NCBI GenBank assembly: GCA_013416795.1
Contig: RQSC01000653.1
Coordinates: 2,558 to 22,385, forward strand
Source: Prasinococcaceae sp. CCMP 1430
Taxonomy: Eukaryota > Plantae > Prasinodermophyta
Direction of reading: 5' to 3'
DNA: 19,828 nucleotides
Position numbers and translations under genes: made by a program. The notes beneath the pieces are model-generated. The model saw only the letters and a program-made list of their open reading frames with translations, had not been told where the DNA came from and did no database searches. Position 1 is the first letter of the stretch, and every line of letters begins with the position of its first letter. Below, piece after piece: positions 4,001 to 19,828 of this stretch.

Positions 4001-4995
4001 CGATCGGCGCCTCTGACGTCGTGGCCACCGCCGAGGGCCTGGAGGTGTACGTGCCGCTGCCGCCGCGCGGCGGGTACTACTACGACGTTCGGGTGCGCGA
4101 CGTGATGGCGTTCGTCGACGGGATCGCCGACGGGGAGGGCGGCGACACTTCGCTCACGTTGTCCATCGCCAAGGGCGCGTCGTCGCGCATCATCGATGGC
4201 GACGGCGAGGTGCTGGCCTTCAGCCATGCGCCGCCGTTGCCCTACTCATTTACGTACGACCTTGAGACCTGCAGGCCACTCACCAACACGGTGCCCGACG
4301 CGACATTCATCCCGTACTCACCCTACGGCCTGTGGACGGTGGGCTTCCCCTCGCACGGCGGTGCGCTGAGCGCCTCGCAGCTAGCCACGGTGACTGCAGT
4401 GCGGCTGATTTTCGATGTCGAGTTCGCCACCGACCCTCGCGCGGCGCACACCAACTTTTTCGGCGTCGGCAGCGACGCAGAGGAGCTCGTGGACGCCGAG
4501 AATCCCGCACCGGAGGCGTGCATCACGCCAGCCTCCGCCGGCGGCTCGGGCGTGCCGCCGCCAATAGCACGACCCGACGGCAGCGGGGATTCTGGAGGTA
4601 GCGATGCGCCGACTGGCGACGAGTCATGCGCGCGGCACAAGGACTGCGGCTTGACGAGCTACTGCGACACGGCCATGAAGTGCTTCGCCTGCGAGCTGTG
4701 CTGCGCGTACGGCGATGCATACGACGGCGCGTGCCCTGCAACCTGCGGCTGCGCCGCATCGAGCGGAGGCGGCAATGCGAAGGATAGGAAGAGCAAGAGC
4801 AAGAACAAAACCAAGAGCAAGAACAAGAGCAAGAGCAAGAGCAAGAAGAAGAGCAAGACGAAGGAGAAGAAGCTCTCAAAGAAACAAGTCAAGAAGCTCT
4901 GCAAGAAGGCAAAGAAGTCCAAGAAGAAGTGCAAAAAGGGCGACGCCAAGAAGAACTGCAAGTTCAGCAAGAAGAAGGGCTGCGCCCCCAAGTAG
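1004..4995 (+). CDS. Large secreted multidomain protein (LNR/Notch repeats, Pro-rich tract, coiled coil, EF-hand, C-terminal beta domain, Lys-rich tail). Exon 1 1004-1096, exon 2 from 1364; main open frame 1453-4995
   Basis: ATG at 1004 starts a signal-peptide-like MRSLTAALALCVLTGWGVRAANA. Donor CAG|GTACGG at 1097, branch GCTGAC at 1326-1331, first downstream AG at 1362-1363. The join gives GGCQ-CTTSCG...DWCKT, then a frame break near 1462 leads into the 1180-aa ORF. Two LNR repeats (CxxGC...WIxDGMCDSACxNAACNYDGxDC) plus a degenerate third; EF-hand-like loop DADGDDRVSARE at 2641-2676; stop TAG at 4993-4995. Confidence 0.85.
1097..1363 (+). other. Spliceosomal intron 1 of the secreted protein gene (267 nt, GT..AAG)
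   Basis: GTACGG donor, CTGAC branch point, first downstream AG. The phase-0 join restores a coherent Cys-rich motif. Confidence 0.65.
1540..1728 (+). repeat. Tandem duplication (96-nt period) encoding two LNR repeats
   Basis: Units 1540-1635 and 1636-1728 both begin TGCGCCTCCGGTTGT and share GACGGCATGTGCGACAG and AACGCCGCTTGCAACTACGACGGC. Confidence 0.9.
1729..1800 (+). repeat. Coding microsatellite (GACAAC)3(GACTAC)9 = (DN)3(DY)9
   Basis: Read directly from the sequence, in frame with the 1453-4995 ORF. Confidence 0.95.
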
Positions 4996-5262
4996 AGACG
5001 GGCCGGATGGCGGCTGCGATCGCCGCCCGCACGAACCAGACGAATCCGAACAACCCCGAGCATGAATCACCCGCCCGAACCATGCTCGCTGCTCCCTGGC
5101 TGGCTGGCGGGGTCCAGTGCGCGCAGGCATCCGCACAGAGCCATGGCATCCATTGTGATAGTCCGACCTGCCGATGGTCATTCATTACGTATGATAAATT
5201 GAAAAGGCGCAACCCCGCTGGCACCGCAAGCACGCGCGGTCACGATCGTCGCGCACATCGCC

Positions 5263-5333
5263 CACACGAACTTGATCGCTCAAACGAACTCGATCGCTCT
5301 CACGGACTTAGTGAGCGCTCACACGAACTTGCT
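5263..5333. repeat. Four degenerate 18-21 bp tandem units overlapping the PIP5K stop codon
   Basis: CACACGAACTTGATCGCT / CAAACGAACTCGATCGCT / CTCACGGACTTAGTGAGCGCT / CACACGAACTTGCT. Confidence 0.75.
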
Positions 5334-8125
5334 CCTCATGAATTCCTGGAAGCGCCTCGAGTACCTGACCGGGTCGACCGCCGAGATGGTCCTGCCGTCG
5401 TGGATGATGCTCTTGAAGACGTTCTCCGCCTGCTTCTGCGTGTTGTATTCCTCTGTTTGCGCGCAGGGGACGCGCGCGGCGAGCGAGCACGCGCGCGGGC
5501 CACACGCGTCAGCCAGCGCATCGCGCGGGAGGCACGAAGACGGGCCTCGCTCGCGCGTCGCTCGCGCCTCGCGCGACGGCGCACTGCACGCAGCCAGCCA
5601 GCCGCGAGAACGCACGCAGGAAGTCGATGACGCCGAAGTAGAGCACGCAGTCGCGCACGGCGGGGTCGTTGTCTTCGTCCCCCTCCTCGTCCCCCTCGTC
5701 GACCCCCGCCTCCGTGTCGCTGAAGGAGGAGACTGCGCCGCTGCCCAGGACGCGCCGCCGCCTGTTGCGCTGCGTCCGATGGTCCGGCGGCACGGCCACT
5801 GCGGCCATGTTGACCCCGAGCTCCACGCGCCCGTGGCCGAAGGCGTGCGCGAGGGCGTCGGTGCCGCCGTCCGCGCCGGGCAGCGGCCGCAGCGTGTGCG
5901 AGCGCTGCGGGCGCGCGGTCACCACCTTGACCAGCTCGTGCCGCGGCAGCGCCCGCGGGGCCGGGTCGACGCGGCGCGGGTCGACTCCGAGGTCGCGCCG
6001 GTGGTCGACCTCGAGCACGCGCTCCAGGGAGGAGGCGATCTCGCTGAGGGCGTCGCCGTTGCCCTGGGGCCCCGCCTCGCGCCCTTCGCCCCCCTCGGCC
6101 CCTTCGCCCCCCTCGCCCTGCTGCCTCGCCTCGGCTCCCCCGCCCCCCTCGCCGTTCGCGGCGTCCCTGTAGTGCACGCCGAGGAGCAGCGAGTAGTCCA
6201 TCACGCGGCACCGCTCCAGCAGGTGGCAGTCGTGCACCATCTGCCGCATGAGCTTCTCCCTCCACGTGGCCTCCATCTTGAACACGACGGGCAGGTCCAG
6301 GTCCTTCAGTATGGTCGTCGACTTCAGCTGCTTGTCGGGCGCCGTCAGCCGCCCCTGCGTCGAGCCCTTGAGGTCGTACCGGCGGTGGATGCGCAGGTCC
6401 GTGCAGAAGAGGTTGCCCATCACCACGAAGCGCACGTTCCGCCCGCCGCTCGGCTTGACGCGGTACATGCCCAGGAAGCGCGTGAGCAGAGTCTGCGGGT
6501 ACTTGCGCACGTGCGCGTGGTAGCGCGGCAGCATCTCCATGAGCAGCTTGCACTCGTGCTTGCGCATGGTCTTGATGATGAAGCGATCGTCGTCGCTGAT
6601 GAAGAAGACGCTGCCGCTCTTGCCGGGGGAGCCCATCTGGCTGAGCGCCTTGTCGCCGCACACGCTGAGCATGTAGTCGCCCGTGTCGACGCCGAAGAGC
6701 GCGCGCAGCTCCTGGAACACCGCCGGGCAGTAGTCCTTCCACTTGAAGTCGCCCGAGCTGTGCGGCGGGGTGGTGGGCCCGCCCGTCCGCGGGAAGGACA
6801 CCTTGACCTTGGCGCGGAAGTCCGAGCCGACCACCTCGGAGGGCGCGCCCCGCGCGGCGAGCCGCCCCACCGAGTGGCGGATACCCAGCTGCAGGTTCAC
6901 CATGAGCTCGTACGAGCGGTGGCCCTTGTACACGGTCTCGCCCAGCCGCTCGTTGCCGCTCAGGCTGGTATAGAGCATGCGCTTGCCCTTCTTGCGCCGC
7001 CGCCGCGGCAGGTTGCGCGGCAGCTCACGCAGCTGCTCGCTCACCACCACCCCCGCCGAGTACTCGCGCACCATGACGCAGCGCGGCGCCTCGGAGCCGC
7101 CGCCCCCCCCGCCCCCGCCCCCGCCCCCGCCGCCGCCGGACGCTCCTCACGCCGCCGTCGCTCGTCGCGCTGCCGTCGCTCCTCACGCCGCCGTCGCTCG
7201 TCATGCCGCCCGAGCCGTCCGCGTCCCCGGACCCGCCGCCGCCGCCCTGCCGCCGCCGCCGTCGCTGCTGCTGCTGCTCCTGCTGCTGCTGCTGTCCCTC
7301 CGCGCCGCCCGCGCCCCCCGCTGCCTGGCCCCGCGCGCTGCCGGCCGCAGCGGCGACGCTCCTCCCTTTGGCGAGCCTCTTGGCCCTGTTGGCGTCCTTG
7401 GACCGCTGCGCCTTGTTCGGCCCCACCCCCGCCGGGTAGAAGATGCCCCGGCCGTGCTTGACCCCGTCCCTCCACTCGCCGTCGTACACGGACGTGTCCG
7501 CCCACGTGAAGATGCCGTGGCCGTGCTCGTGCGAGTCGCGCCACTCGCCGTCGTACCTGTCGCCGTTGGCCCACACGAAGGTGCCGTGGCCGGACATCTC
7601 GCCGGCGTGCCACTCGCCCGAGTACTCCGAGCCGTCGGCCCACTGGTAGCGCCCGGGGCCGTCGCTCATGCCGTTTCGCCACAGGCCCTCGAACGTGTCG
7701 CCGTTCGGGTAGTCCTTGCGACCTGCGGCGCGCAGAGGCGGAGGGGGAGCAGGGGAGGTGTGTGTGTGTGTGTGGTAACGAGAGAGGGAGGTGCAGCCTT
7801 AGATCTGTCAGTGCTGCGCGCGCCTCGTCCCACGCGGCGCACGTCAAGCGAGCGCCGGCGCGCTCGCCGGCGCGCCGGCGCGCCGCGCCGCGGCTCGCAT
7901 CGCACCCAGCCCGTGCTTGACGTCCTTGACCCAGCTGCCCTCGTAGCGCGTCCCGTCGGGCGACGTGTGCGTGCCCACGCCCTGCATGCAGCCGTCCATC
8001 CACTCGCCGTCGTACGTGGCGCCGCTCCCCCACGCGTAGCGCCCGCGGCCGTGCTTCAGGCCGTGCAGCCACTCGCCCTCGTAGCTCGACCCGTCCGCCC
8101 ACACGTAGCGGCCGCTGCCGGACGG
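5319..8125 (-). CDS. PIP5K: MORN-repeat phosphatidylinositol-4-phosphate 5-kinase (plant subfamily B type), 5'-partial. Exons 8125-7906, 7722-5616 (frame discontinuity at ~7186-7090), 5452-5319
   Basis: Seven full plus one partial MORN repeats (YEGEW...KHGRG). Kinase motifs MVNLQLGIRHSVG, FKWKDYCPAVF, SPGKSGSVFFISDDDRFIIKT, YDLKGS, LKDLD, MDYSLLLGVH. Splicing out 5615-5453 restores IDFLQEY...ISAVDP.YS.RF. The first exon(s) probably lie in or beyond gap 8205-8395. Confidence 0.95.
5453..5615 (-). other. PIP5K last intron (163 nt, GTGCGT..ACAG)
   Basis: Phase-1 join C|AG restores the conserved IDxLQEY; GCTGAC branch point present. Confidence 0.9.
7723..7905 (-). other. PIP5K intron (183 nt, GTGCGA..CGCAG)
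   Basis: Join restores MORN continuity KHGLG-RKDYPNGDTFEGLW. Confidence 0.9.
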
Positions 8126-9460: not shown

Positions 9461-9993
9461 ATGGCGTCCACCATCGGCATGATGGACGAGGCGTACTTCG
9501 TCGGGCGCAACGAACTGCTCGCGTGGATCCGCTCGGTGACGGGCGTGGCGCTCGACAAGGTCGAGGAGGCGTGCACCGGCGCGGTCTACTGCCAGGTGAT
9601 CGAGGCGCTGCACCCCGGCACCATCAAGCTCGCGCAGGTCAAGACCAAGGCGCGCTCAGAGTACGACTACATCTGCAACTTCAAGCTGCTGCAGAAGGCC
9701 TTCGACAAGCTCAGGATCCAAAAGGTGCGCGCGAGAGAGAGAGCGGCCGCGCCGCGCGGAGGCGCCCGCACGGCCCGCGCAGCCCTCTGACCCTGGACCG
9801 CGCGCCGCGTCGGCCGCCCGCCCGCGAATTCCGCACGCTCGCCGGCCGCGCGAAGCGCATCGAGGTGGACCGGCTGATCAAGGGCAAGCCGCTGGACAAC
9901 ATCGAGTTCTGCCAGTGGTTCAAGCGCTACAGCGACACCGTCACCGGTGGCGGCGATGCCGTCGGCTCGGACGCCATAAAGGCGCAGGTCGCG
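9461..9993 (+). CDS. EB1: Microtubule end-binding protein EB1 (RP/EB family), CH domain. Exons 9461-9724 and 9856-9993; 3' part not found
   Basis: [22 protein letters not shown]...[13 protein letters not shown]...HPG...[19 protein letters not shown], spliced to [25 protein letters not shown], matches the plant/algal EB1 N-terminus. Intron 9725-9855 (GTGCGC..GCGAAG). Likely next donor GTGCGT at 9994. Confidence 0.92.
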
Positions 9994-10146
9994 GTGCGTG
10001 CAGCCCCCGCACTGGCCTGCGCCGTCCGCGCGCGTAACAGCCTCCTCCCCCCCCTCCCTTTCCCCCCCCGCCTCGGCGCCCTTCTCCCTCGAGCTGCTGA
10101 CGCCTCCCCCGGCCTCGGCGCGGTCGCGCCGCGGTGCCCCGCCTCG

Positions 10147-10695
10147 TCAACCTGGCCTCATCTCTGCCCAACCGCGCCCGCGCACACACGCCACCTCTTC
10201 CCCCACCCCCTCGCCCTGCGCGCGCACACGCACGTTGCGCGGGTTCGTGCCTGCCTCCGCCTGCTTGAGCCAGCACTGCCCAGCACACCACGACGCCTCC
10301 CTGCAGAACACCCATACGTTGCAGCCGCGATGTGCCGTGCAGCGTGCACAGCACTCGCCGGCATTGGCAGCGGGCGCCGCGGCACGGGGGCCCGCGCCCG
10401 CCTGCACCACGGCGCCGTCGAGCTCCACGTGCGGCCTTGACGCGCACAGCGGCGCCTGCGCGCGTGCCAGCACAGGCGGTAGGGCCGCGTGCACAGCCTT
10501 CGCGATCACAAGTGAAGCCCCCCCCCTCCTCGCCACGGACGGGGCCAGGCTCTCCAGCCTTGCCCCGCCCATCCCCCTAGCACTCAGCACATGGTGCAGG
10601 AAGGCCATCGTCGCGCCCAGCGCCCCTGCCGCGAGCACCACCGCCGCAGCCGCTCGCGCCATGCTGCGGCCGCGCCGCGTGCCACGCGGGCGCAT
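10147..10695 (-). CDS. N-terminally anchored or secreted protein with an Apple/PAN-like Cys-rich domain; possibly 3'-truncated
   Basis: ATG at 10695 or 10662, then hydrophobic [19 protein letters not shown]. Motif VELDGAVV...[20 protein letters not shown]...CAGQCWLK has the PAN/Apple-like CC..C....CNVW..C...CWLK pattern. Confidence 0.7.
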
Positions 10696-10854
10696 CGCAG
10701 CGGCCCAGACGCCGCCGCCGTCCTCCCCCCACACACCTCGCCTTCCGCCCGGTGCCACCCGCGCTCGCGGGTGGGCGCGAGCGCCGCTGCTGCGCTGCAG
10801 TGTGGCGTCCGCGAAGTCCAAGTCAGCCCACCGGCACCGAGCGTGCGTGCGTTT

Positions 10855-13502: not shown

Positions 13503-15826
13503 CTAGAAGTCGTCCCTGCCGAGCAGCTTGGGCACGAGCGTGAAGAGCAGCGGAATGAGGCCCACGCCCGAGATGGAGAGCTTCTCGTTGGTCGAGAGGC
13601 GCGTGGTGACCTGCCCCTGCCCCCTGCTGTTGATGTTAGCGCGCACCGTCATGGCCGTGTCGGGCGTCAGGTTGAACTGGGAGGTGCCGTTGACGCCCAG
13701 CGCCGTGTCGTTGCGCCAGTGCATGAGCGAGCCGCCGATCGAGTGGCGCGTGGTGACCGAGGGATCCTTGGAGCCCAGCATGAGCTCGGCGTTGCCGCCC
13801 ATCGCCTTGTCGCCGCGCGCCTCGATCACGCCTCCCGACACCACCAGCTTGGTGCCGGGGCGGATCTTGAGGCGGTTCTCGAGCTTGACGCCCTTGGCCA
13901 CGCAGCCGGCGACCTTCGCCAGGCTGATCCCCGCCGCCGTCTTGTTCATGGCCCGGTTCTTCCAGCGCGTCTCCGCGCGCGCGGTGTACGCCATGTCCTT
14001 GCCCACCGTCTGCACGTCCACGCCCGCCGTGGACACCACGCGCTTGGTGTGCTTGACGCTCGCCTCGCCCTCCAGCGTGATGTTCGTGTCGGTCTTGTTC
14101 TTCGTGATCTGCCCCGAAATGTTGGCGGGCGTCGCCGAGCGCAGCCGCCTCTTGCGCGGCAGCACCGAGTTGGCGGCGTCCTCGACCACGAAGGGCTTCT
14201 CCATGCTGAAGCCCTCGATGCCCGTCTCGTGGTCCCAGCCGTGGCTCTCCATGACGGGGCGCATCGCCCAGCTGTTGGCGCTCTCGACGAAGCGATAGCG
14301 GTGCGCGGGCGTGTCGCCGTCGAAGGTCGGCGGCATCGCCGGGTCGGGCGCGGGCACCTCCACCTGCGGGCGCGCGGGGCCCGCCTCGGCCGCCGCCGCC
14401 GCCGCCGCCGCCTCCTCCTCCTCCTCGTCCTCGGGGAAGAGCTCCTCCTCGGGCGGGTACTCCTCGCCCTCGGCCCCGTCGTCGGCCAGCTTGCGCGGCG
14501 AGCGGCTGGTGATGAGCGAGCTCAGCAGGAAGGGCAGCGGCGCCGCCTTCTGCTGCTGCCCGCCCGCCGCGCCGCCGCGCCCGCCGGGGCCGCCGCGCTG
14601 NNNNNNNNNNNNNNNNNNNNNNNNNNNNNNNNNNNNNNNNNNNNNNNNNNNNNNNNNNNNNNNNNNNNNNNNNNNNNNNNNNNNNNNNNNNNNNNNNNNN
14701 NNNNNNNNNNNNNNNNNNNNNNNNNNNNNNNNNNNNNNNNNNNNNNNNNNNNNNNNNNNNNNNNNNNNNNNNNNNNNNNNNNNNNNNNNNNNNNNNNNNN
14801 NNNNNNNNNNNNNNNNNNNNNNNNNNNNNNNNNNNNNNNNNNNNNNNNNNNNNNNNNNNNNNNNNNNNNNNNNNNNNNNNNNNNNNNNNNNNNNNNNNNN
14901 NNNNNNNNNNNNNNNNNNNNNNNNNNNNNNNNNNNNNNNNNNNNNNNNNNNNNNNNNNNNNNNNNNNNNNNNNNNNNNNNNNNNNNNNNNNNNNNNNNNN
15001 NNNNNNNNNNNNNNNNNNNNNNNNNNNNNNNNNNNNNNNNNNNNNNNNNNNNNNNNNNNNNNNNNNNNNNNNNNNNNNNNNNNNNNNNNNNNNNNNNNNN
15101 NNNNNNNNNNNNNNNNNNNNNNNNNNNNNNNNNNNNNNNNNNNNNNNNNNNNNNNNNNNNNNNNNNNNNNNNNNNNNNNNNNNNNNNNNNNNNNNNNNNN
15201 NNNNNNNNNNNNNNNNNNNNNNNNNNNNNNNNNNNNNNNNNNNNNNNNNNNNNNNNNNNNNNNNNNNNNNNNNNNNNNNNNNNNNNNNNNNNNNNNNNNN
15301 NNNNNNNNNNNNNNNNNNNNNNNNNNNNNNNNNNNNNNNNNNNNNNNNNNNNNNNNNNNNNNNNNNNNNNNNNNNNNNNNNNNNNNNNNNNNNNNNNNNN
15401 NNNNNNNNNNNNNNNNNNNNNNNNNNNNNNNNNNNNNNNNNNNNNNNNNNNNNNNNNNNNNNNNNNNNNNNNNNNNNNNNNNNNNNNNNNNNNNNNNNNN
15501 NNNNNNNNNNNNNNNNNNNNNNNNNNNNNNNNNNNNNNNNNNNNNNNNNNNNNNNNNNNNNNNNNNNNNNNNNNNNNNNNNNNNNNNCGAGCGCGGCCTC
15601 GGCCTCCGCGGCGGCGTCGGCGGCGAGCGCCTGCGCCTGCTCCGCGGCGACGTCGGCGACGGCATCGGCGACGTCGTCGTCGTAGTCGTCCTCCTCTTCG
15701 GTGTCGCTCGGGTATTCCTCCTCGTCGTACATGGCGCCCTCTTCCTCCGAGGTGGTCACGTCGCTCTCGGAATCTGTCGCGGGCGCGGCGGCGGCGGGGC
15801 GGCGCGCGTCAGCGGCCGCCTCGCGC
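13503..15826 (-). CDS. TOC159: Toc159-family (Toc159/132/120/90) chloroplast import receptor, partial: M-domain 14600-13503, acidic A-domain fragment 15826-15588; G-domain presumably in the gap
   Basis: PLPFLLSSLITSR...VEVPAPDPAMPPTFDGDTPAHRYRFVE...W..RPVMESHGWDHETGIEG...GQITK...S.KH...AGVDVQTVGKDMAYTARAETR.KN...NKTAAGIS...GVKLENRL are characteristic M-domain motifs. Upstream acidic DSESD..EEEGAMYDEEEYPSDTEEEDDYDDD. Stop at 13505-13503. Confidence 0.92.
14601..15587. other. Assembly gap within the Toc159-family gene
   Basis: Run of N. Confidence 0.99.
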
Positions 15827-16666
15827 NNNNNNNNNNNNNNNNNNNNNNNNNNNNNNNNNNNNNNNNNNNNNNNNNNNNNNNNNNNNNNNNNNNNNNNNNN
15901 NNNNNNNNNNNNNNNNNNNNNNNNNNNNNNNNNNNNNNNNNNNNNNNNNNNNNNNNNNNNNNNNNNNNNNNNNNNNNNNNNNNNNNNNNNNNNNNNNNNN
16001 NNNNNNNNNNNNNNNNNNNNNNNNNNNNNNNNNNNNNNNNNNNNNNNNNNNNNNNNNNNNNNNNNNNNNNNNNNNNNNNNNNNNNNNNNNNNNNNNNNNN
16101 NNNNNNNNNNNNNNNNNNNNNNNNNNNNNNNNNNNNNNNNNNNNNNNNNNNNNNNNNNNNNNNNNNNNNNNNNNNNNNNNNNNNNNNNNNNNNNNNNNNN
16201 NNNNNNNNNNNNNNNNNNNNNNNNNNNNNNNNNNNNNNNNNNNNNNNNNNNNNNNNNNNNNNNNNNNNNNNNNNNNNNNNNNNNNNNNNNNNNNNNNNNN
16301 NNNNNNNNNNNNNNNNNNNNNNNNNNNNNNNNNNNNNNNNNNNNNNNNNNNNNNNNNNNNNNNNNNNNNNNNNNNNNNNNNNNNNNNNNNNNNNNNNNNN
16401 NNNNNNNNNNNNNNNNNNNNNNNNNNNNNNNNNNNNNNNNNNNNNNNNNNNNNNNNNNNNNNNNNNNNNNNNNNNNNNNNNNNNNNNNNNNNNNNNNNNN
16501 NNNNNNNNNNNNNNNNNNNNNNNNNNNNNNNNNNNNNNNNNNNNNNNNNNNNNNNNNNNNNNNNNNNNNNNNNNNNNNNNNNNNNNNNNNNNNNNNNNNN
16601 NNNNNNNNNNNNNNNNNNNNNNNNNNNNNNNNNNNNNNNNNNNNNNNNNNNNNNNNNNNNNNNNNN
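15827..16666. other. Assembly gap (probably holds the Toc159-family 5' end)
   Basis: Run of N. Confidence 0.97.
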
Positions 16667-17547: not shown

Positions 17548-18483
17548 NNNNNNNNNNNNNNNNNNNNNNNNNNNNNNNNNNNNNNNNNNNNNNNNNNNNN
17601 NNNNNNNNNNNNNNNNNNNNNNNNNNNNNNNNNNNNNNNNNNNNNNNNNNNNNNNNNNNNNNNNNNNNNNNNNNNNNNNNNNNNNNNNNNNNNNNNNNNN
17701 NNNNNNNNNNNNNNNNNNNNNNNNNNNNNNNNNNNNNNNNNNNNNNNNNNNNNNNNNNNNNNNNNNNNNNNNNNNNNNNNNNNNNNNNNNNNNNNNNNNN
17801 NNNNNNNNNNNNNNNNNNNNNNNNNNNNNNNNNNNNNNNNNNNNNNNNNNNNNNNNNNNNNNNNNNNNNNNNNNNNNNNNNNNNNNNNNNNNNNNNNNNN
17901 NNNNNNNNNNNNNNNNNNNNNNNNNNNNNNNNNNNNNNNNNNNNNNNNNNNNNNNNNNNNNNNNNNNNNNNNNNNNNNNNNNNNNNNNNNNNNNNNNNNN
18001 NNNNNNNNNNNNNNNNNNNNNNNNNNNNNNNNNNNNNNNNNNNNNNNNNNNNNNNNNNNNNNNNNNNNNNNNNNNNNNNNNNNNNNNNNNNNNNNNNNNN
18101 NNNNNNNNNNNNNNNNNNNNNNNNNNNNNNNNNNNNNNNNNNNNNNNNNNNNNNNNNNNNNNNNNNNNNNNNNNNNNNNNNNNNNNNNNNNNNNNNNNNN
18201 NNNNNNNNNNNNNNNNNNNNNNNNNNNNNNNNNNNNNNNNNNNNNNNNNNNNNNNNNNNNNNNNNNNNNNNNNNNNNNNNNNNNNNNNNNNNNNNNNNNN
18301 NNNNNNNNNNNNNNNNNNNNNNNNNNNNNNNNNNNNNNNNNNNNNNNNNNNNNNNNNNNNNNNNNNNNNNNNNNNNNNNNNNNNNNNNNNNNNNNNNNNN
18401 NNNNNNNNNNNNNNNNNNNNNNNNNNNNNNNNNNNNNNNNNNNNNNNNNNNNNNNNNNNNNNNNNNNNNNNNNNNNNNNNNNN
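17548..18483. other. Assembly gap upstream of or within Toc34
   Basis: Run of N. Confidence 0.99.
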
Positions 18484-18484
18484 G

Positions 18485-19645
18485 ATGGGGCTGGCGCCGC
18501 GCCCCGCCGACTCGGCGGCGGCGGGCGCCCCGGCGGACGCGTCGGAGTCCGAGGGGGAGTCGGTCGCGGCGTCGTGGGCGGGCCTCGCGGCGATGCCCGC
18601 GGCCACGCAGGCGGCGCTGCTCGCGACCGTGCGCGAGATGCAGGCCAAGGGGCGCGACAGCCTGACCGTGCTGCTGGTGGGCAAGGCCGGCATGGGCCGC
18701 TCCGCGCTGTGCAACAGCATGCTCGGCGAGCGCGTCGTCGCGGGCCCGGGCGGCGTCTTCGCGCGGGGCGCGCCGGGCGCGGGCGCGGACGCGCCGCGCT
18801 CGTACTCGCGGAGCGCGGCGGGCTTCACGCTGACCGTGATCGACACGCCGCCGCTGGTGGAGGGCGACTGCGTCGACGAGTCGGCCGTCGCGGCGCTCAG
18901 CGAGTTCGTGGGCGACCTGGAGGACGGCGTCGACGTGGTGGCGTACGTGGATCGCCTGGACAACTACCGCTGCGACGCGCGCGACCGCGAGTGCTGCCAG
19001 GCGATCACGCGCGCGTTCGGCGGGCGCGTGTGGGAGCGCACCGTGCTCGCGCTCACGCGCGGGCAGTACACGGTGCCCATGGAGGGGGTGAGCTACGACG
19101 ACTACCTGGAGAAGCGCTCCGAGGCGCTCGCGGGCTGCGCGCGCGGCGCGGGCGCGCCCGCGCGGGCGGCGCTGCTCGCCGTGCCGTGCGAGAACGGCAG
19201 CCGCTGCGCGACCAACGAGGGCGGGGAGAAGGTGACCCCCGACGGCGCGGCGTGGCTGCCCACGCTGTTCGCAGCGTGCGCGGAGACGGCGCTCGCGGCG
19301 GGCGACGGGCCCATGCACCACGACGCGGAGCGCATGGCGCGCTCGTGCGACCGCAAGGGCCGCCTGTGGATGCTGCCGCTGCTCGCGCTGCAGGCGGCGG
19401 TGCTCTTCCCGCTGGCGCGCGCGGCGTGCCGGTGGGACAACGAGCGCGAGCTCAAGGAGCGCACGCCGCGCCGCGCGCCCGCCACGCTGCCCAAGGCGGT
19501 GGCGGACGCGATGGCGGCCAGCGAGGACGACGACCTGCTCGGCGGCGGCGGGGCGGTCGTGGGGGCCGCGGACGCGGCGAGCAGCGACGTGTCCCTCGAT
19601 GACTTCGAGGACGACGAGGACGACGACGAGGACTTCGAGGCCTAG
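18485..19645 (+). CDS. TOC34: Toc34/Toc33 chloroplast outer-envelope import receptor with degenerate GTPase motifs; true start may be upstream (e.g. ATG 17512)
   Basis: Collinear with plant Toc34: WAGL..MPAATQ..LL...SLTVLLVGK.G.G.S...NS.LGERVV...SRS.AGFTLTVIDTP.LVEG...DVVAYVDRLDNYR.D..D......IT..FG..VW...YDDYLEKRSEAL...EN..RC..NEGGEKV.PDG.AWLP.L, then TM WMLPLLALQAAVLFPL and an acidic tail. Stop TAG at 19643-19645. Confidence 0.95.
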   Translation: MGLAPRPADSAAAGAPADASESEGESVAASWAGLAAMPAATQAALLATVREMQAKGRDSLTVLLVGKAGMGRSALCNSMLGERVVAGPGGVFARGAPGAGADAPRSYSRSAAGFTLTVIDTPPLVEGDCVDESAVAALSEFVGDLEDGVDVVAYVDRLDNYRCDARDRECCQAITRAFGGRVWERTVLALTRGQYTVPMEGVSYDDYLEKRSEALAGCARGAGAPARAALLAVPCENGSRCATNEGGEKVTPDGAAWLPTLFAACAETALAAGDGPMHHDAERMARSCDRKGRLWMLPLLALQAAVLFPLARAACRWDNERELKERTPRRAPATLPKAVADAMAASEDDDLLGGGGAVVGAADAASSDVSLDDFEDDEDDDEDFEA

Positions 19646-19828
19646 CGCGGCGGCGGCCGGCGGGTCCCGGGTGGCGGGCGGACGGCTGGACGGAGGAAGG
19701 GCGCGGGCTGGCAGGGAGGGGACGGGGGGGGGTATGCCGGCGCGCTGGGGACGCCCCCGGCCGCGCGCGAGTAACGCAACAGAGCCGCGGACGCACCGCC
19801 ACTTGCGCCGCCGGCGAGCGCGCGCGCC

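What the first reader, a model, noticed from the sequence alone, without database searches (positions are those of the whole stretch)
18680..19060. Toc34 with three degraded nucleotide-binding motifs: candidate pseudo-GTPase import receptor
Seen in sequence: G1 reads GKAGMGRSA (Arg codon at 18698-18700) where plant Toc34 has GKGGVGKSS. G3 reads DTPP (18842-18853) instead of DTPG. G4 reads LTR (19052-19060) instead of LTH. The switch-I S.FQSE segment is replaced by GPGGVFARGAPGAG. The dimerisation segment DRLDxYR (Arg at 18968-18970), the TM anchor and an intact ORF are all retained. Established knowledge: the P-loop Lys, DxxG Gly and G4 His contribute to GTP binding or hydrolysis in Toc GTPases. 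Inference: concerted loss in an otherwise conserved protein suggests a naturally nucleotide-independent Toc34 acting as scaffold or arginine-finger donor for Toc159.
Basis: partly seen in the sequence, partly recalled or inferred. Interest (0 to 1): 0.8.

Follow-up and report, generated by a model that had tools for sequence, protein, structure and literature searches.

The report
Chloroplast import receptor with altered GTP site
A marine green picoalga makes a normal-looking, expressed chloroplast import receptor (Toc34) whose key GTP-handling lysine is an arginine, so it probably cannot hydrolyse GTP; this is a natural test of whether that activity is needed.

Summary
ORF 18485-19645 (+) is a Toc34 orthologue: pea Toc34 E 8e-49, and the AF2 model matches Toc33/34 crystals at TM 0.85-0.92. 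It reads GKAGMGRSA (R72), DTPP (P123) and LTR (R192), with a divergent, longer switch I. The arginine finger (R162), G5 and the membrane anchor are retained. An independent culture RNA assembly and two marine metatranscriptomes carry the same codons and end about 55 nt after the stop.

Only one of the three "degraded" motifs is truly unusual. Among 68 Toc34-like representatives, G4 Arg occurs in 17 and a non-Gly G3 in 16, though Pro occurs only here. P-loop Arg occurs in 2: a Tara Oceans sister species (69% identical, GRS/DTPG/LTR) and an unrelated core-chlorophyte transcript.

The pocket motifs are the best-conserved parts between the two sister species (85-92% against 71% overall). dN/dS is at most 0.43. 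The neighbouring Toc159 appears canonical.

Best reading: a hydrolysis-dead, weak-binding small receptor paired with a canonical Toc159, not a nucleotide-free scaffold. The engineered atToc159 K868R bound GTP 4.5-fold less well and showed no detectable hydrolysis.

A second, canonical Toc34 elsewhere in the genome could not be excluded. The true N-terminus lies in an assembly gap.

The parts
18485..19645 (+). Toc34 orthologue ORF as visible in the window (386 aa plus stop); 5' end probably incomplete
   Evidence: Pfam AIG1 8.2e-21. Pea Toc34 1h65 E 7.8e-49 and Chlamydomonas Toc34 7vcf_G 1.5e-39. AF2 pLDDT 84.9, Foldseek TMt 0.85-0.92 to Toc33/34. Placed inside the Toc34 clade.
17548..18483 (.). 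Assembly gap (N run) that probably hides the acidic N-terminal segment and the true start codon
   Evidence: Gap map. In L005, an acidic stretch homologous to the N-terminus of P0001 and Prasinococcus Toc34 lies upstream of the MGLAPRP motif. DNA contig X1 record 1 extends 303 nt upstream of 18484.
18680..18706 (+). G1 / P-loop GKAGMGRSA; Arg72 (18698-18700) replaces the invariant Lys
   Evidence: Among 68 other representatives: K 60, R 2, A 1 in a misaligned chimeric row. 121 of 123 P-loops in the best 153 hits have K.
18737..18808 (+). Switch-I region (residues 85-108), longer and Gly/Ala/Pro-rich; the plant S-x-S-P-F-Q-S-E segment is not recognisable
   Evidence: Alignments. AF2 pLDDT falls to 58-81 here. 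Only 54% identical to the sister species. Environmental variant A93G.
18842..18853 (+). G3 DTPP; Pro123 replaces the DxxG Gly
   Evidence: Pro is unique among 68 representatives, but S, A, D or H occur in 16. The sister species P0001 has DTPG and Prasinococcus has DTPD.
18950..18970 (+). DRLDNYR dimerisation motif with arginine finger Arg162 (equivalent of atToc33 R130)
   Evidence: R in 55 of 67 filled positions among the representatives. The segment is 90% identical to the sister species.
19052..19060 (+). G4 LTR; Arg192 in place of His
   Evidence: R in 17 of 66 representatives, including Chlorella, Auxenochlorella-like and Pedinophyceae.
19190..19216 (+). G5 ENGSRCATN (Glu236-Asn237 retained)
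   Evidence: The segment is 91% identical to the sister species.
19355..19432 (+). C-terminal membrane-anchor helix (residues 291-316)
   Evidence: AF2 helix 290-325. The conserved hydrophobic W-x-x-P-L-L-A-L-Q segment aligns with the anchor of other Toc34s.
19433..19642 (+). Post-anchor tail of about 70 residues ending in an acidic run (DDFEDDEDDDEDFEA), predicted to face the intermembrane space
   Evidence: Shared with P0001. Similar acidic ends are seen in P0018, Tetraselmis, and Chlamydomonas and Monoraphidium Toc34.
19646..19706 (+). 3' UTR; RNA contigs end at 19699-19706 while DNA contigs continue
   Evidence: tables 2 and 8.
13506..14600 (-). Membrane-anchor (beta-barrel) domain of the Toc159-family receptor, head-to-head with Toc34; its G domain lies in N gap 14601-15587
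   Evidence: Pfam TOC159_MAD 9.3e-89. L005 shows the G domain with GKTGVGKSA, DSPG, LTHA and ENH motifs.

Best explanation
The ORF encodes the orthologous small TOC receptor (Toc34) of a marine green picoalga. Its nearest named relative for this protein is Prasinococcus capsulatus. The protein keeps the Toc34 G-domain fold, the DRLDxYR dimer motif with its arginine finger, the G5 motif and the tail anchor. It is transcribed and under purifying selection.

Its own catalytic site is altered. The P-loop Lys is Arg, a change fixed before the split from an uncultured sister species. In this species the G3 Gly is also Pro, which has no backbone NH to sense the gamma-phosphate. Switch I has been rebuilt.

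Inferred mechanism: the protein still has a constrained pocket and probably binds guanine nucleotide weakly, but hydrolyses it little or not at all. It would act as the non-hydrolysing half of the Toc34-Toc159 G-domain heterodimer. In that role it docks and positions Toc159 and supplies Arg162 in trans to Toc159's GTP. The neighbouring canonical Toc159 would carry the only working GTP switch.

Shown: identity, motif states, expression, conservation and distribution among relatives. Inferred: loss of hydrolysis, weakened binding, heterodimer role.
For: Identity and fold. Motif states.

Real and expressed: the codons are identical in DNA run X1 and in RNA-type run X15. Two metatranscriptome contigs of 1206 and 1158 nt span the ORF and stop at about 19700, while DNA continues. 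Their few differences spare the motifs; the three synonymous ones lie at codons 170 (G domain), 263 and 352.

Fixed in a lineage: sister species P0001 (69% identical, Tara Oceans contigs) has GRS and LTR. Eight population variants of it keep them.

Rare: 60 K against 2 R among 68 representatives, and 121 of 123 P-loops in the best 153 hits have K.

Constraint: Nei-Gojobori dN/dS is 0.43. This is an upper bound, because GC3 is 0.99 and dS is near saturation. There is no rate acceleration relative to Prasinococcus: path lengths are 0.97 against 0.88. G1, Arg-finger, G4 and G5 segments are 85-92% identical to the sister species, against 71% for the G domain.

Experimental precedent: atToc159G-K868R has 4.5-fold lower GTP affinity and no detectable hydrolysis, yet still docks at chloroplasts (PMC2173378). 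atToc33 nucleotide binding and dimerisation are 'not essential in vivo' (Aronsson et al. 2010, pmid 20444229, title seen). An AF3 TOC model names K49/S50/S51, H160 and N209 as Toc33's own GTP contacts and R130 as the trans contact (bioRxiv 10.1101/2025.10.27.683105).

Partner: the adjacent Toc159 has canonical GKS, DxPG, TH and ENH motifs in the noisy copy L005.
Against: There is no biochemical measurement. Arg can still contact phosphates, and co-evolved changes such as R192 and the new switch I might restore activity. The strong conservation of the pocket motifs fits an active GTPase equally well. G3 and G4 variation is common in algal Toc34s that are presumed functional, for example DTCG in Chlamydomonas and DTPS/LTR in Chlorella. 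Motif deviation in this family is therefore a weak predictor of activity. The Toc159 G-domain motifs come from an error-prone single-read contig. The heterodimer prediction gave no verdict. A second, canonical Toc34 in the same genome was not excluded.
Confidence: 0.55

Rival explanations
1. It is still a working GTPase. Arg72 substitutes functionally for Lys, and the other changes are neutral or compensatory lineage-specific variation, so the receptor cycles GTP much as other Toc34s do.
For: The pocket motifs are the best-conserved segments between the two sister species. Ser73, Asp120, Thr121, Glu236 and Asn237 and the P-loop glycines are all kept. G3 and G4 variants are widespread in algal Toc34. 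K868R in atToc159 retained measurable GTP binding.
Against: The same substitution abolished detectable hydrolysis in the paralogous TOC GTPase (PMC2173378). Lys is kept in 60 of 63 representatives with a residue at that position. Pro123 removes the backbone NH that contacts the gamma-phosphate in DxxG GTPases (established knowledge). Switch I is unrecognisable.
Confidence: 0.2
2. The protein is a fully nucleotide-independent pseudo-GTPase: the pocket is empty and the protein is a pure scaffold and arginine-finger donor.
For: G1 Arg, G3 Pro and a rebuilt switch I occur together in one protein. The arginine finger and anchor are retained. atToc33 nucleotide binding is dispensable in planta (pmid 20444229).
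Against: An unused pocket should drift. Instead G1, G4 and G5 are 85-92% identical to a relative that is 71% identical overall, and the Mg/phosphate and guanine-contact residues persist. The sister species keeps DTPG. K-to-R reduced GTP binding only 4.5-fold in atToc159.
Confidence: 0.15
3. It is one of two Toc34 paralogues. A canonical copy elsewhere in the genome does the GTP-dependent work, and this copy is a specialised or regulatory isoform, comparable to GMS versus GKS immunity-related GTPases or to atToc33 versus atToc34.
For: The rest of the genome could not be searched with these tools. Land plants do carry two Toc34 isoforms (papers listed).
Against: No second prasinodermophyte-like Toc34 appeared in the exhaustive representative search or in the word searches with this protein and with Prasinococcus Toc34. 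This copy sits head-to-head with the Toc159 gene. It branches where the species' orthologue is expected, as sister to Prasinococcus. Earlier notes on this genome mention no other Toc34, but that is weak evidence. From my own knowledge, green algae usually have a single Toc34.
Confidence: 0.12
4. It is an artefact or a decaying pseudogene.
For: The locus is flanked by assembly gaps and its start is missing.
Against: The codons are identical in independent DNA and RNA assemblies and in field metatranscriptomes. The reading frame is open and dN/dS is at most 0.43. The sister species and its population variants conserve the same states. The fold is predicted with high confidence.
Confidence: 0.01

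Closest known systems
Toc34/Toc33 small receptor GTPases of the chloroplast TOC translocon (pea Toc34 1H65/3BB1, Arabidopsis Toc33 3BB3/3BB4, Chlamydomonas Toc34 7VCF_G)
   Same: AIG1-type G domain, 36-39% identity and TM 0.85-0.92 to the crystal structures. DRLDxYR arginine-finger motif, G5 ENx motif, C-terminal tail anchor, acidic N-terminal region, and a Toc159 gene next door.
   Different: The P-loop has Arg for Lys, G3 has Pro for Gly, and G4 has Arg for His (the last is common in algae). Switch I is longer and unrecognisable. A post-anchor tail of about 70 residues ends in an acidic run.
Engineered atToc159 K868R (Smith et al. 2002, PMC2173378) and atToc33 nucleotide-binding/dimerisation mutants (Aronsson et al. 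2010, pmid 20444229)
   Same: The P-loop substitution is the same, in the paralogous TOC GTPase. That mutant binds GTP 4.5-fold less well, shows no detectable hydrolysis and still docks at chloroplasts. The Toc33 mutants still support import in planta.
   Different: Those are laboratory mutants in plants. Here the change is natural, fixed in at least two species and accompanied by other pocket changes.
GMS-type immunity-related GTPases (Irgm proteins) and other pseudoGTPases that keep the fold but alter G1 (from my own knowledge, not tested here)
   Same: A natural replacement of the P-loop Lys in one member of a pair of GTPases that interact through their G domains. The altered member acts as regulator of the canonical one.
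   Different: A different family (IRG versus AIG1/TOC), Met rather than Arg, and a cytosolic immune function. Only the logic is shared.
Toc34-like transcript P0018 (core-chlorophyte clade, Logan contig of run ERR2041026)
   Same: GKPTAGRSS P-loop (Arg), DTPH at G3, LTRGG at G4 and an acidic C-terminal end. This is the same combination of states.
   Different: Only 33-36% identical. It lies inside a well-supported core-chlorophyte clade (97*) that excludes the window's protein, so the change arose independently.

Membership tests
Toc34/Toc33 (small TOC receptor), membership by descent | AIG1-type G domain with best sequence and fold matches to Toc34/Toc33 | tested here: met
   PF04548 8.2e-21. 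1h65 7.8e-49, 3bb1, 3bb3 and 7vcf_G. Foldseek ranks 1-15 are all Toc33/34, TMt 0.85-0.92.
Toc34/Toc33 (small TOC receptor), membership by descent | Branches within the Toc34 clade, apart from Toc159-family G domains | tested here: met
   Toc34 and Toc159 are split by a 100* branch. The window protein with P0001 is sister to Prasinococcus Toc34 (SH-aLRT 89).
Toc34/Toc33 (small TOC receptor), membership by descent | Single C-terminal tail-anchor helix after the G domain | tested here: met
   AF2 helix 290-325. A hydrophobic segment aligns with the anchors of other Toc34s. No dedicated TM predictor was available.
Toc34/Toc33 (small TOC receptor), membership by descent | DRLDxYR dimerisation motif with arginine finger (atToc33 R130) | tested here: met
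   DRLDNYR with R162 at 18968-18970.
Toc34/Toc33 as an active GTPase | G1 GxxxxGK[ST] with the phosphate-binding Lys | tested here: not met
   GKAGMGRSA; Arg72 aligns with Lys.
Toc34/Toc33 as an active GTPase | G3 DxxG Gly | tested here: not met
   DTPP. However, 16 of 67 representatives also lack the Gly, so it is not strictly defining in algae.
Toc34/Toc33 as an active GTPase | G4 T-H and G5 E-N guanine contacts (atToc33 H160, N209) | tested here: inconclusive
   G5 is kept. G4 His is replaced by Arg, a state found in 17 of 66 representatives.
Toc34/Toc33 as an active GTPase | Binds and hydrolyses GTP | not testable with these tools
   Needs recombinant protein. The only proxy is atToc159 K868R.
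TOC complex component | Located in the chloroplast outer envelope and associated with Toc159 and Toc75 | not testable with these tools
   Only gene adjacency to Toc159 is available. The complex prediction gave no verdict.
pseudoGTPase (fold kept, nucleotide binding and/or hydrolysis lost) | Loss of catalytic or binding residues together with measured loss of activity | tested here: inconclusive
   Residue-level criterion met for G1 and G3. Activity was not measured. Pocket conservation argues against complete loss of binding.

The most novel reading that the evidence does not exclude
Green algae have at least twice independently fixed a catalytically dead small TOC receptor with a P-loop Arg. 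One case is the clade holding this alga and its Tara Oceans sister species. The other is an unrelated core chlorophyte. If this protein is the sole Toc34 in its genome, chloroplast protein import in these algae runs with a single hydrolysing GTPase (Toc159). Toc34's conserved role would then be structural and regulatory (docking and arginine-finger donation) rather than enzymatic.
Probability: 0.35. Interest if true: 0.7.

Novelty: new variant of a known kind. Interest (0 to 1): 0.55.

Why it matters
[quoted passage not shown] Plant mutants suggested they improve import but are not essential for it. A wild alga, its sister species and an independent chlorophyte lineage have fixed the very P-loop substitution that kills hydrolysis in the laboratory. 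They nevertheless keep the rest of the protein under selection, next to a canonical Toc159. This offers a natural system to ask which functions of Toc34 need its own GTPase cycle. It also gives ready-made revertant experiments (R72K, P123G). Finally, it cautions against reading G3 and G4 deviations in algal Toc34s as loss of function, because they are common.

Tried and rejected
1. The word-index protein searches with the window protein (whole, and residues 27-310) returned only 4 and 2 hits, because Ala-rich words swamped the candidate list. The exhaustive representative search was therefore used.

2. P0006 (86% identical, DTPP/LTR) first looked like a second independent relative. Its contig L005 turned out to be a low-coverage, indel-ridden copy of the same locus (94% nt identity with 30 gap openings). 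It is used only to see what lies in the window's N gaps, not as independent support.

3. Complex prediction of the Toc159 G-domain fragment (from L005) with the Toc34 G domain gave no verdict (score 0.00). This is neither support nor evidence against.

4. I looked for a canonical paralogue among high-GC hits. P0003, P0011 and P0013 have similar GC3 (0.93-0.98). P0003 and P0011 sit on other metagenome contigs (from their sample names I take these for lake samples; not checked), and all three group with the Mamiellales-type sequences. They were not taken as the same organism.

5. A word search with Prasinococcus Toc34 found only Prasinococcus itself and Chlamydomonas Toc34.

6. The 'long stem branch' was considered as a sign of relaxed constraint and rejected. 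The path from the common node is 0.97, against 0.88 for Prasinococcus.

7. dN/dS is only an upper bound because GC3 is 0.99. No codon-model test was possible with two sequences.

8. Literature searches for Toc34 with pseudo-GTPase or pseudoGTPase, or with Prasinoderma, found nothing. The library does not cover most subscription journals.

Full report
**What is there.**
The window is about 70% G+C and is broken by five N runs. Directly after the gap 17548-18483, an ORF runs from ATG 18485 to the stop at 19643-19645 on the + strand (386 aa).
- Pfam gives AIG1 (8.2e-21).
- The best solved relatives are pea Toc34 (1h65, 7.8e-49), Arabidopsis Toc33 and Chlamydomonas Toc34 (7vcf_G, 1.5e-39). The Toc159-type chain of 7vcf is far behind at 5e-07.
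- An AlphaFold2 model built on 57 homologues has mean pLDDT 84.9. The G domain is above 94 except for residues 81-100. The model includes a C-terminal helix at 290-325.
- Its 15 best Foldseek matches are all Toc33/34 crystals, with target TM 0.85-0.92.

This is a Toc34.

**The observation.**
Every coordinate in the finding is right:
- GKAGMGRSA at 18680-18706, with Arg72 at 18698-18700.
- DTPP at 18842-18853.
- LTR at 19052-19060.
- DRLDNYR, with Arg162 at 18968-18970.

The HMMER alignment to pea Toc34 puts these opposite GKGGVGKSS, DTPG, LTH and DRLDAYR. It also shows the plant switch-I segment replaced by a longer Gly/Ala/Pro-rich stretch.

**Is it real and expressed?**
- A DNA contig of run X1 covers 18484-19828 with no difference.
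- Two contigs of a 2015 run of the same organism (RNA by guess) cover 18521-19699 with 0-1 differences.
- Two marine metatranscriptomes each give one contig across the ORF (18495-19700 and 18549-19706), with 7 and 5 differences.
- None of the differences touches the four motifs. Three are synonymous, at codons 170 (in the G domain), 263 and 352.
- The other four are amino-acid changes in the N-terminal region, the switch-I insert (A93G) and the tail.
- All RNA contigs stop about 55 nt after the stop codon while DNA contigs run on. That is what a transcript end looks like.

**Relatives.**
The exhaustive search of 1.84 billion representatives gave 1005 hits.

The nearest is P0001, 69% identical, found on eight Tara Oceans and other metagenome contigs.
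- It reads GKGGMGRSA, DTPG and LTRGQ.
- Eight population variants of it keep all three states.

The second hit, P0006, sits on contig L005. That contig proved to be an error-rich low-coverage copy of the window's own locus.
- It is not independent evidence.
- It does show what the window's gaps hide.

The closest named protein is Prasinococcus capsulatus Toc34 (42% identical).
- It reads GKNGMGKSS, DTPD and LTHGQ in two independent assemblies.
- In the tree, the window protein and P0001 form a 100* pair that is sister to Prasinococcus (SH-aLRT 89).
- The Mamiellales (Ostreococcus), Pyramimonas/Cymbomonas, Mesostigma/Chlorokybus and plant-type sequences are all canonical.
- The Lys-to-Arg and His-to-Arg changes therefore arose after the split from Prasinococcus and before the split of the two sister species.
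- Pro123 is specific to this species.

**How unusual are the three changes?**
Counts are over 68 other Toc34-like representatives.

| Position | States among representatives |
|---|---|
| P-loop | K 60, R 2, A 1 (a misaligned chimeric row) |
| G3 | G 51, S 9, A 5, D 1, H 1 (Pro only in the window) |
| G4 | H 49, R 17 |

- The DTPS/LTR combination is normal in Chlorella, the Auxenochlorella-like cluster and relatives. Tetraselmis has DTPS and Chlamydomonas has DTCG.
- The P-loop Arg is the rare event. Across the best 153 hits, 121 of 123 P-loops have Lys.
- The second Arg case, P0018, is a transcript contig from run ERR2041026. It reads GKPTAGRSS, DTPH and LTRGG.
- P0018 lies inside a 97* core-chlorophyte clade that excludes the window protein. 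The change has therefore arisen at least twice.

**Selection.**
- Nei-Gojobori dN/dS against P0001 is 0.43 (0.43 in the G domain). GC3 is 0.99 and pS is 0.41, so dS is close to saturation and the true ratio is lower.
- The lineage is not accelerated. From the node shared with Prasinococcus the path lengths are 0.97 and 0.88.
- The pocket-lining segments are the best conserved between the two sister species. G1 is 85% identical, the Arg-finger strand 90%, G4 92% and G5 91%. The G domain as a whole is 71% and switch I is 54%.
- Ser73, Asp120, Thr121, Glu236, Asn237 and the P-loop glycines are all retained.
- A pocket that no longer did anything would be expected to drift, and this one has not.

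**What the changes should do.**
- An AF3 model of the plant TOC complex lists Toc33 K49, S50, S51, H160 and N209 as contacts to its own GTP. It lists R130 as the contact to Toc159's GTP (bioRxiv 10.1101/2025.10.27.683105).
- The window equivalents are R72, S73, A74, R192, N237 and R162.
[quoted passage not shown] 2010, pmid 20444229; title seen).
- Pro at the DxxG Gly removes the backbone NH that senses the gamma-phosphate (established knowledge of P-loop GTPases).

Taken together, the most likely state is weak nucleotide binding with little or no hydrolysis.

**The partner.**
- Head-to-head with Toc34, at 13506-14600 (-), lies the membrane-anchor domain of a Toc159-family protein (TOC159_MAD 9.3e-89).
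- Its G domain falls in the gap 14601-15587.
- In L005 that G domain reads GKTGVGKSA, DSPG and LTHA, followed by the Asp that contacts the partner's GTP, and ENH. All are canonical, with the caveat that L005 is noisy.
- A heterodimer prediction with this fragment gave no verdict.

**Caveats.**
1. The true N-terminus is missing. L005 and P0001 show a conserved acidic segment upstream of the MGLAPRP motif. It resembles the acidic N-termini of other algal Toc34s, so the start codon lies in the gap.
2. I could not search the rest of the genome for a canonical paralogue. None surfaced in any protein search, but this is weak evidence.
3. Nothing here measures nucleotide binding.
4. The organism is coded in the run table. 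'Prasinococcus-lineage marine picoalga' is an inference from the tree and from earlier notes of this scan.

**Verdict.**
The gene is a genuine, expressed and selectively maintained Toc34 orthologue with a naturally fixed P-loop Lys-to-Arg change and, in this species, a G3 Pro.

It is best read as a hydrolysis-impaired small receptor working with a canonical Toc159. The 'nucleotide-independent scaffold' version is less likely because the pocket is still the most conserved part of the protein.

It is a new variant of a known kind. I found no description of it in the searchable literature. Interest is moderate: it gives a natural handle on an old question, although plant mutants had already shown that Toc33's GTPase is dispensable.

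Noticed in passing
window 13506-14600 (-), with gaps 14601-15587 and 15827-16666: The Toc159-family receptor gene lies head-to-head with Toc34. Only its membrane-anchor domain is readable in the window. The same arrangement is seen in the noisy contig L005 (TOC159_MAD genes at 4327-5335, Toc34 at about 9659-10770).
   Followed up: partly
window 17548-18483 (N gap); L005 about 9480-9660: A conserved acidic N-terminal segment of Toc34 (EDDYDPEDDLDADD... in L005, NDFDSEDDLDAEVEE in P0001, acidic in Prasinococcus) lies upstream of the apparent ATG. No start Met is visible next to it in either relative, so a short 5' exon or an unusual start is possible.
   Followed up: partly
L006 75-1310 (P0018, Logan contig of run ERR2041026): An unrelated core-chlorophyte Toc34-like transcript independently carries a P-loop Arg (GKPTAGRSS) together with DTPH and LTRGG. 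The organism is not identified.
   Followed up: partly
P0177 / P0196 (Prasinococcus capsulatus Toc34): G3 reads DTPD, an acidic side chain where the gamma-phosphate-sensing Gly normally sits, in an otherwise canonical Toc34. It is confirmed in two assemblies.
   Followed up: partly
window 19433-19642 (+): There is a long post-anchor tail ending in a run of Asp/Glu (DDFEDDEDDDEDFEA), presumably in the intermembrane space. Similar acidic C-termini occur in P0001, P0018, Tetraselmis, Chlamydomonas and Monoraphidium Toc34 but not in the plant-type sequence. It may be an algal trans-side binding site for basic transit peptides.
   Followed up: no
window 18485-19645: Codon bias is extreme: GC3 is 0.992 in this gene, against 0.885 in the sister species. 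This makes synonymous-rate estimates unreliable for this genome.
   Followed up: partly
L005 (ENA ERZ28548065, record named chicken_3__NODE_1398, coverage 0.48): A 22-kb contig of this alga's Toc159-Toc34 locus turns up in an assembly whose record name suggests a chicken sample. It has many indels. It is probably cross-sample carry-over or a mislabelled error-prone read.
   Followed up: no
L001-L004 (Tara Oceans and other metagenome contigs carrying P0001): All contigs of the sister species end 700-800 nt upstream of Toc34, just where the window has its gaps. The region between Toc34 and Toc159 (acidic-domain repeats, very high G+C) seems hard to assemble in both species.
   Followed up: no
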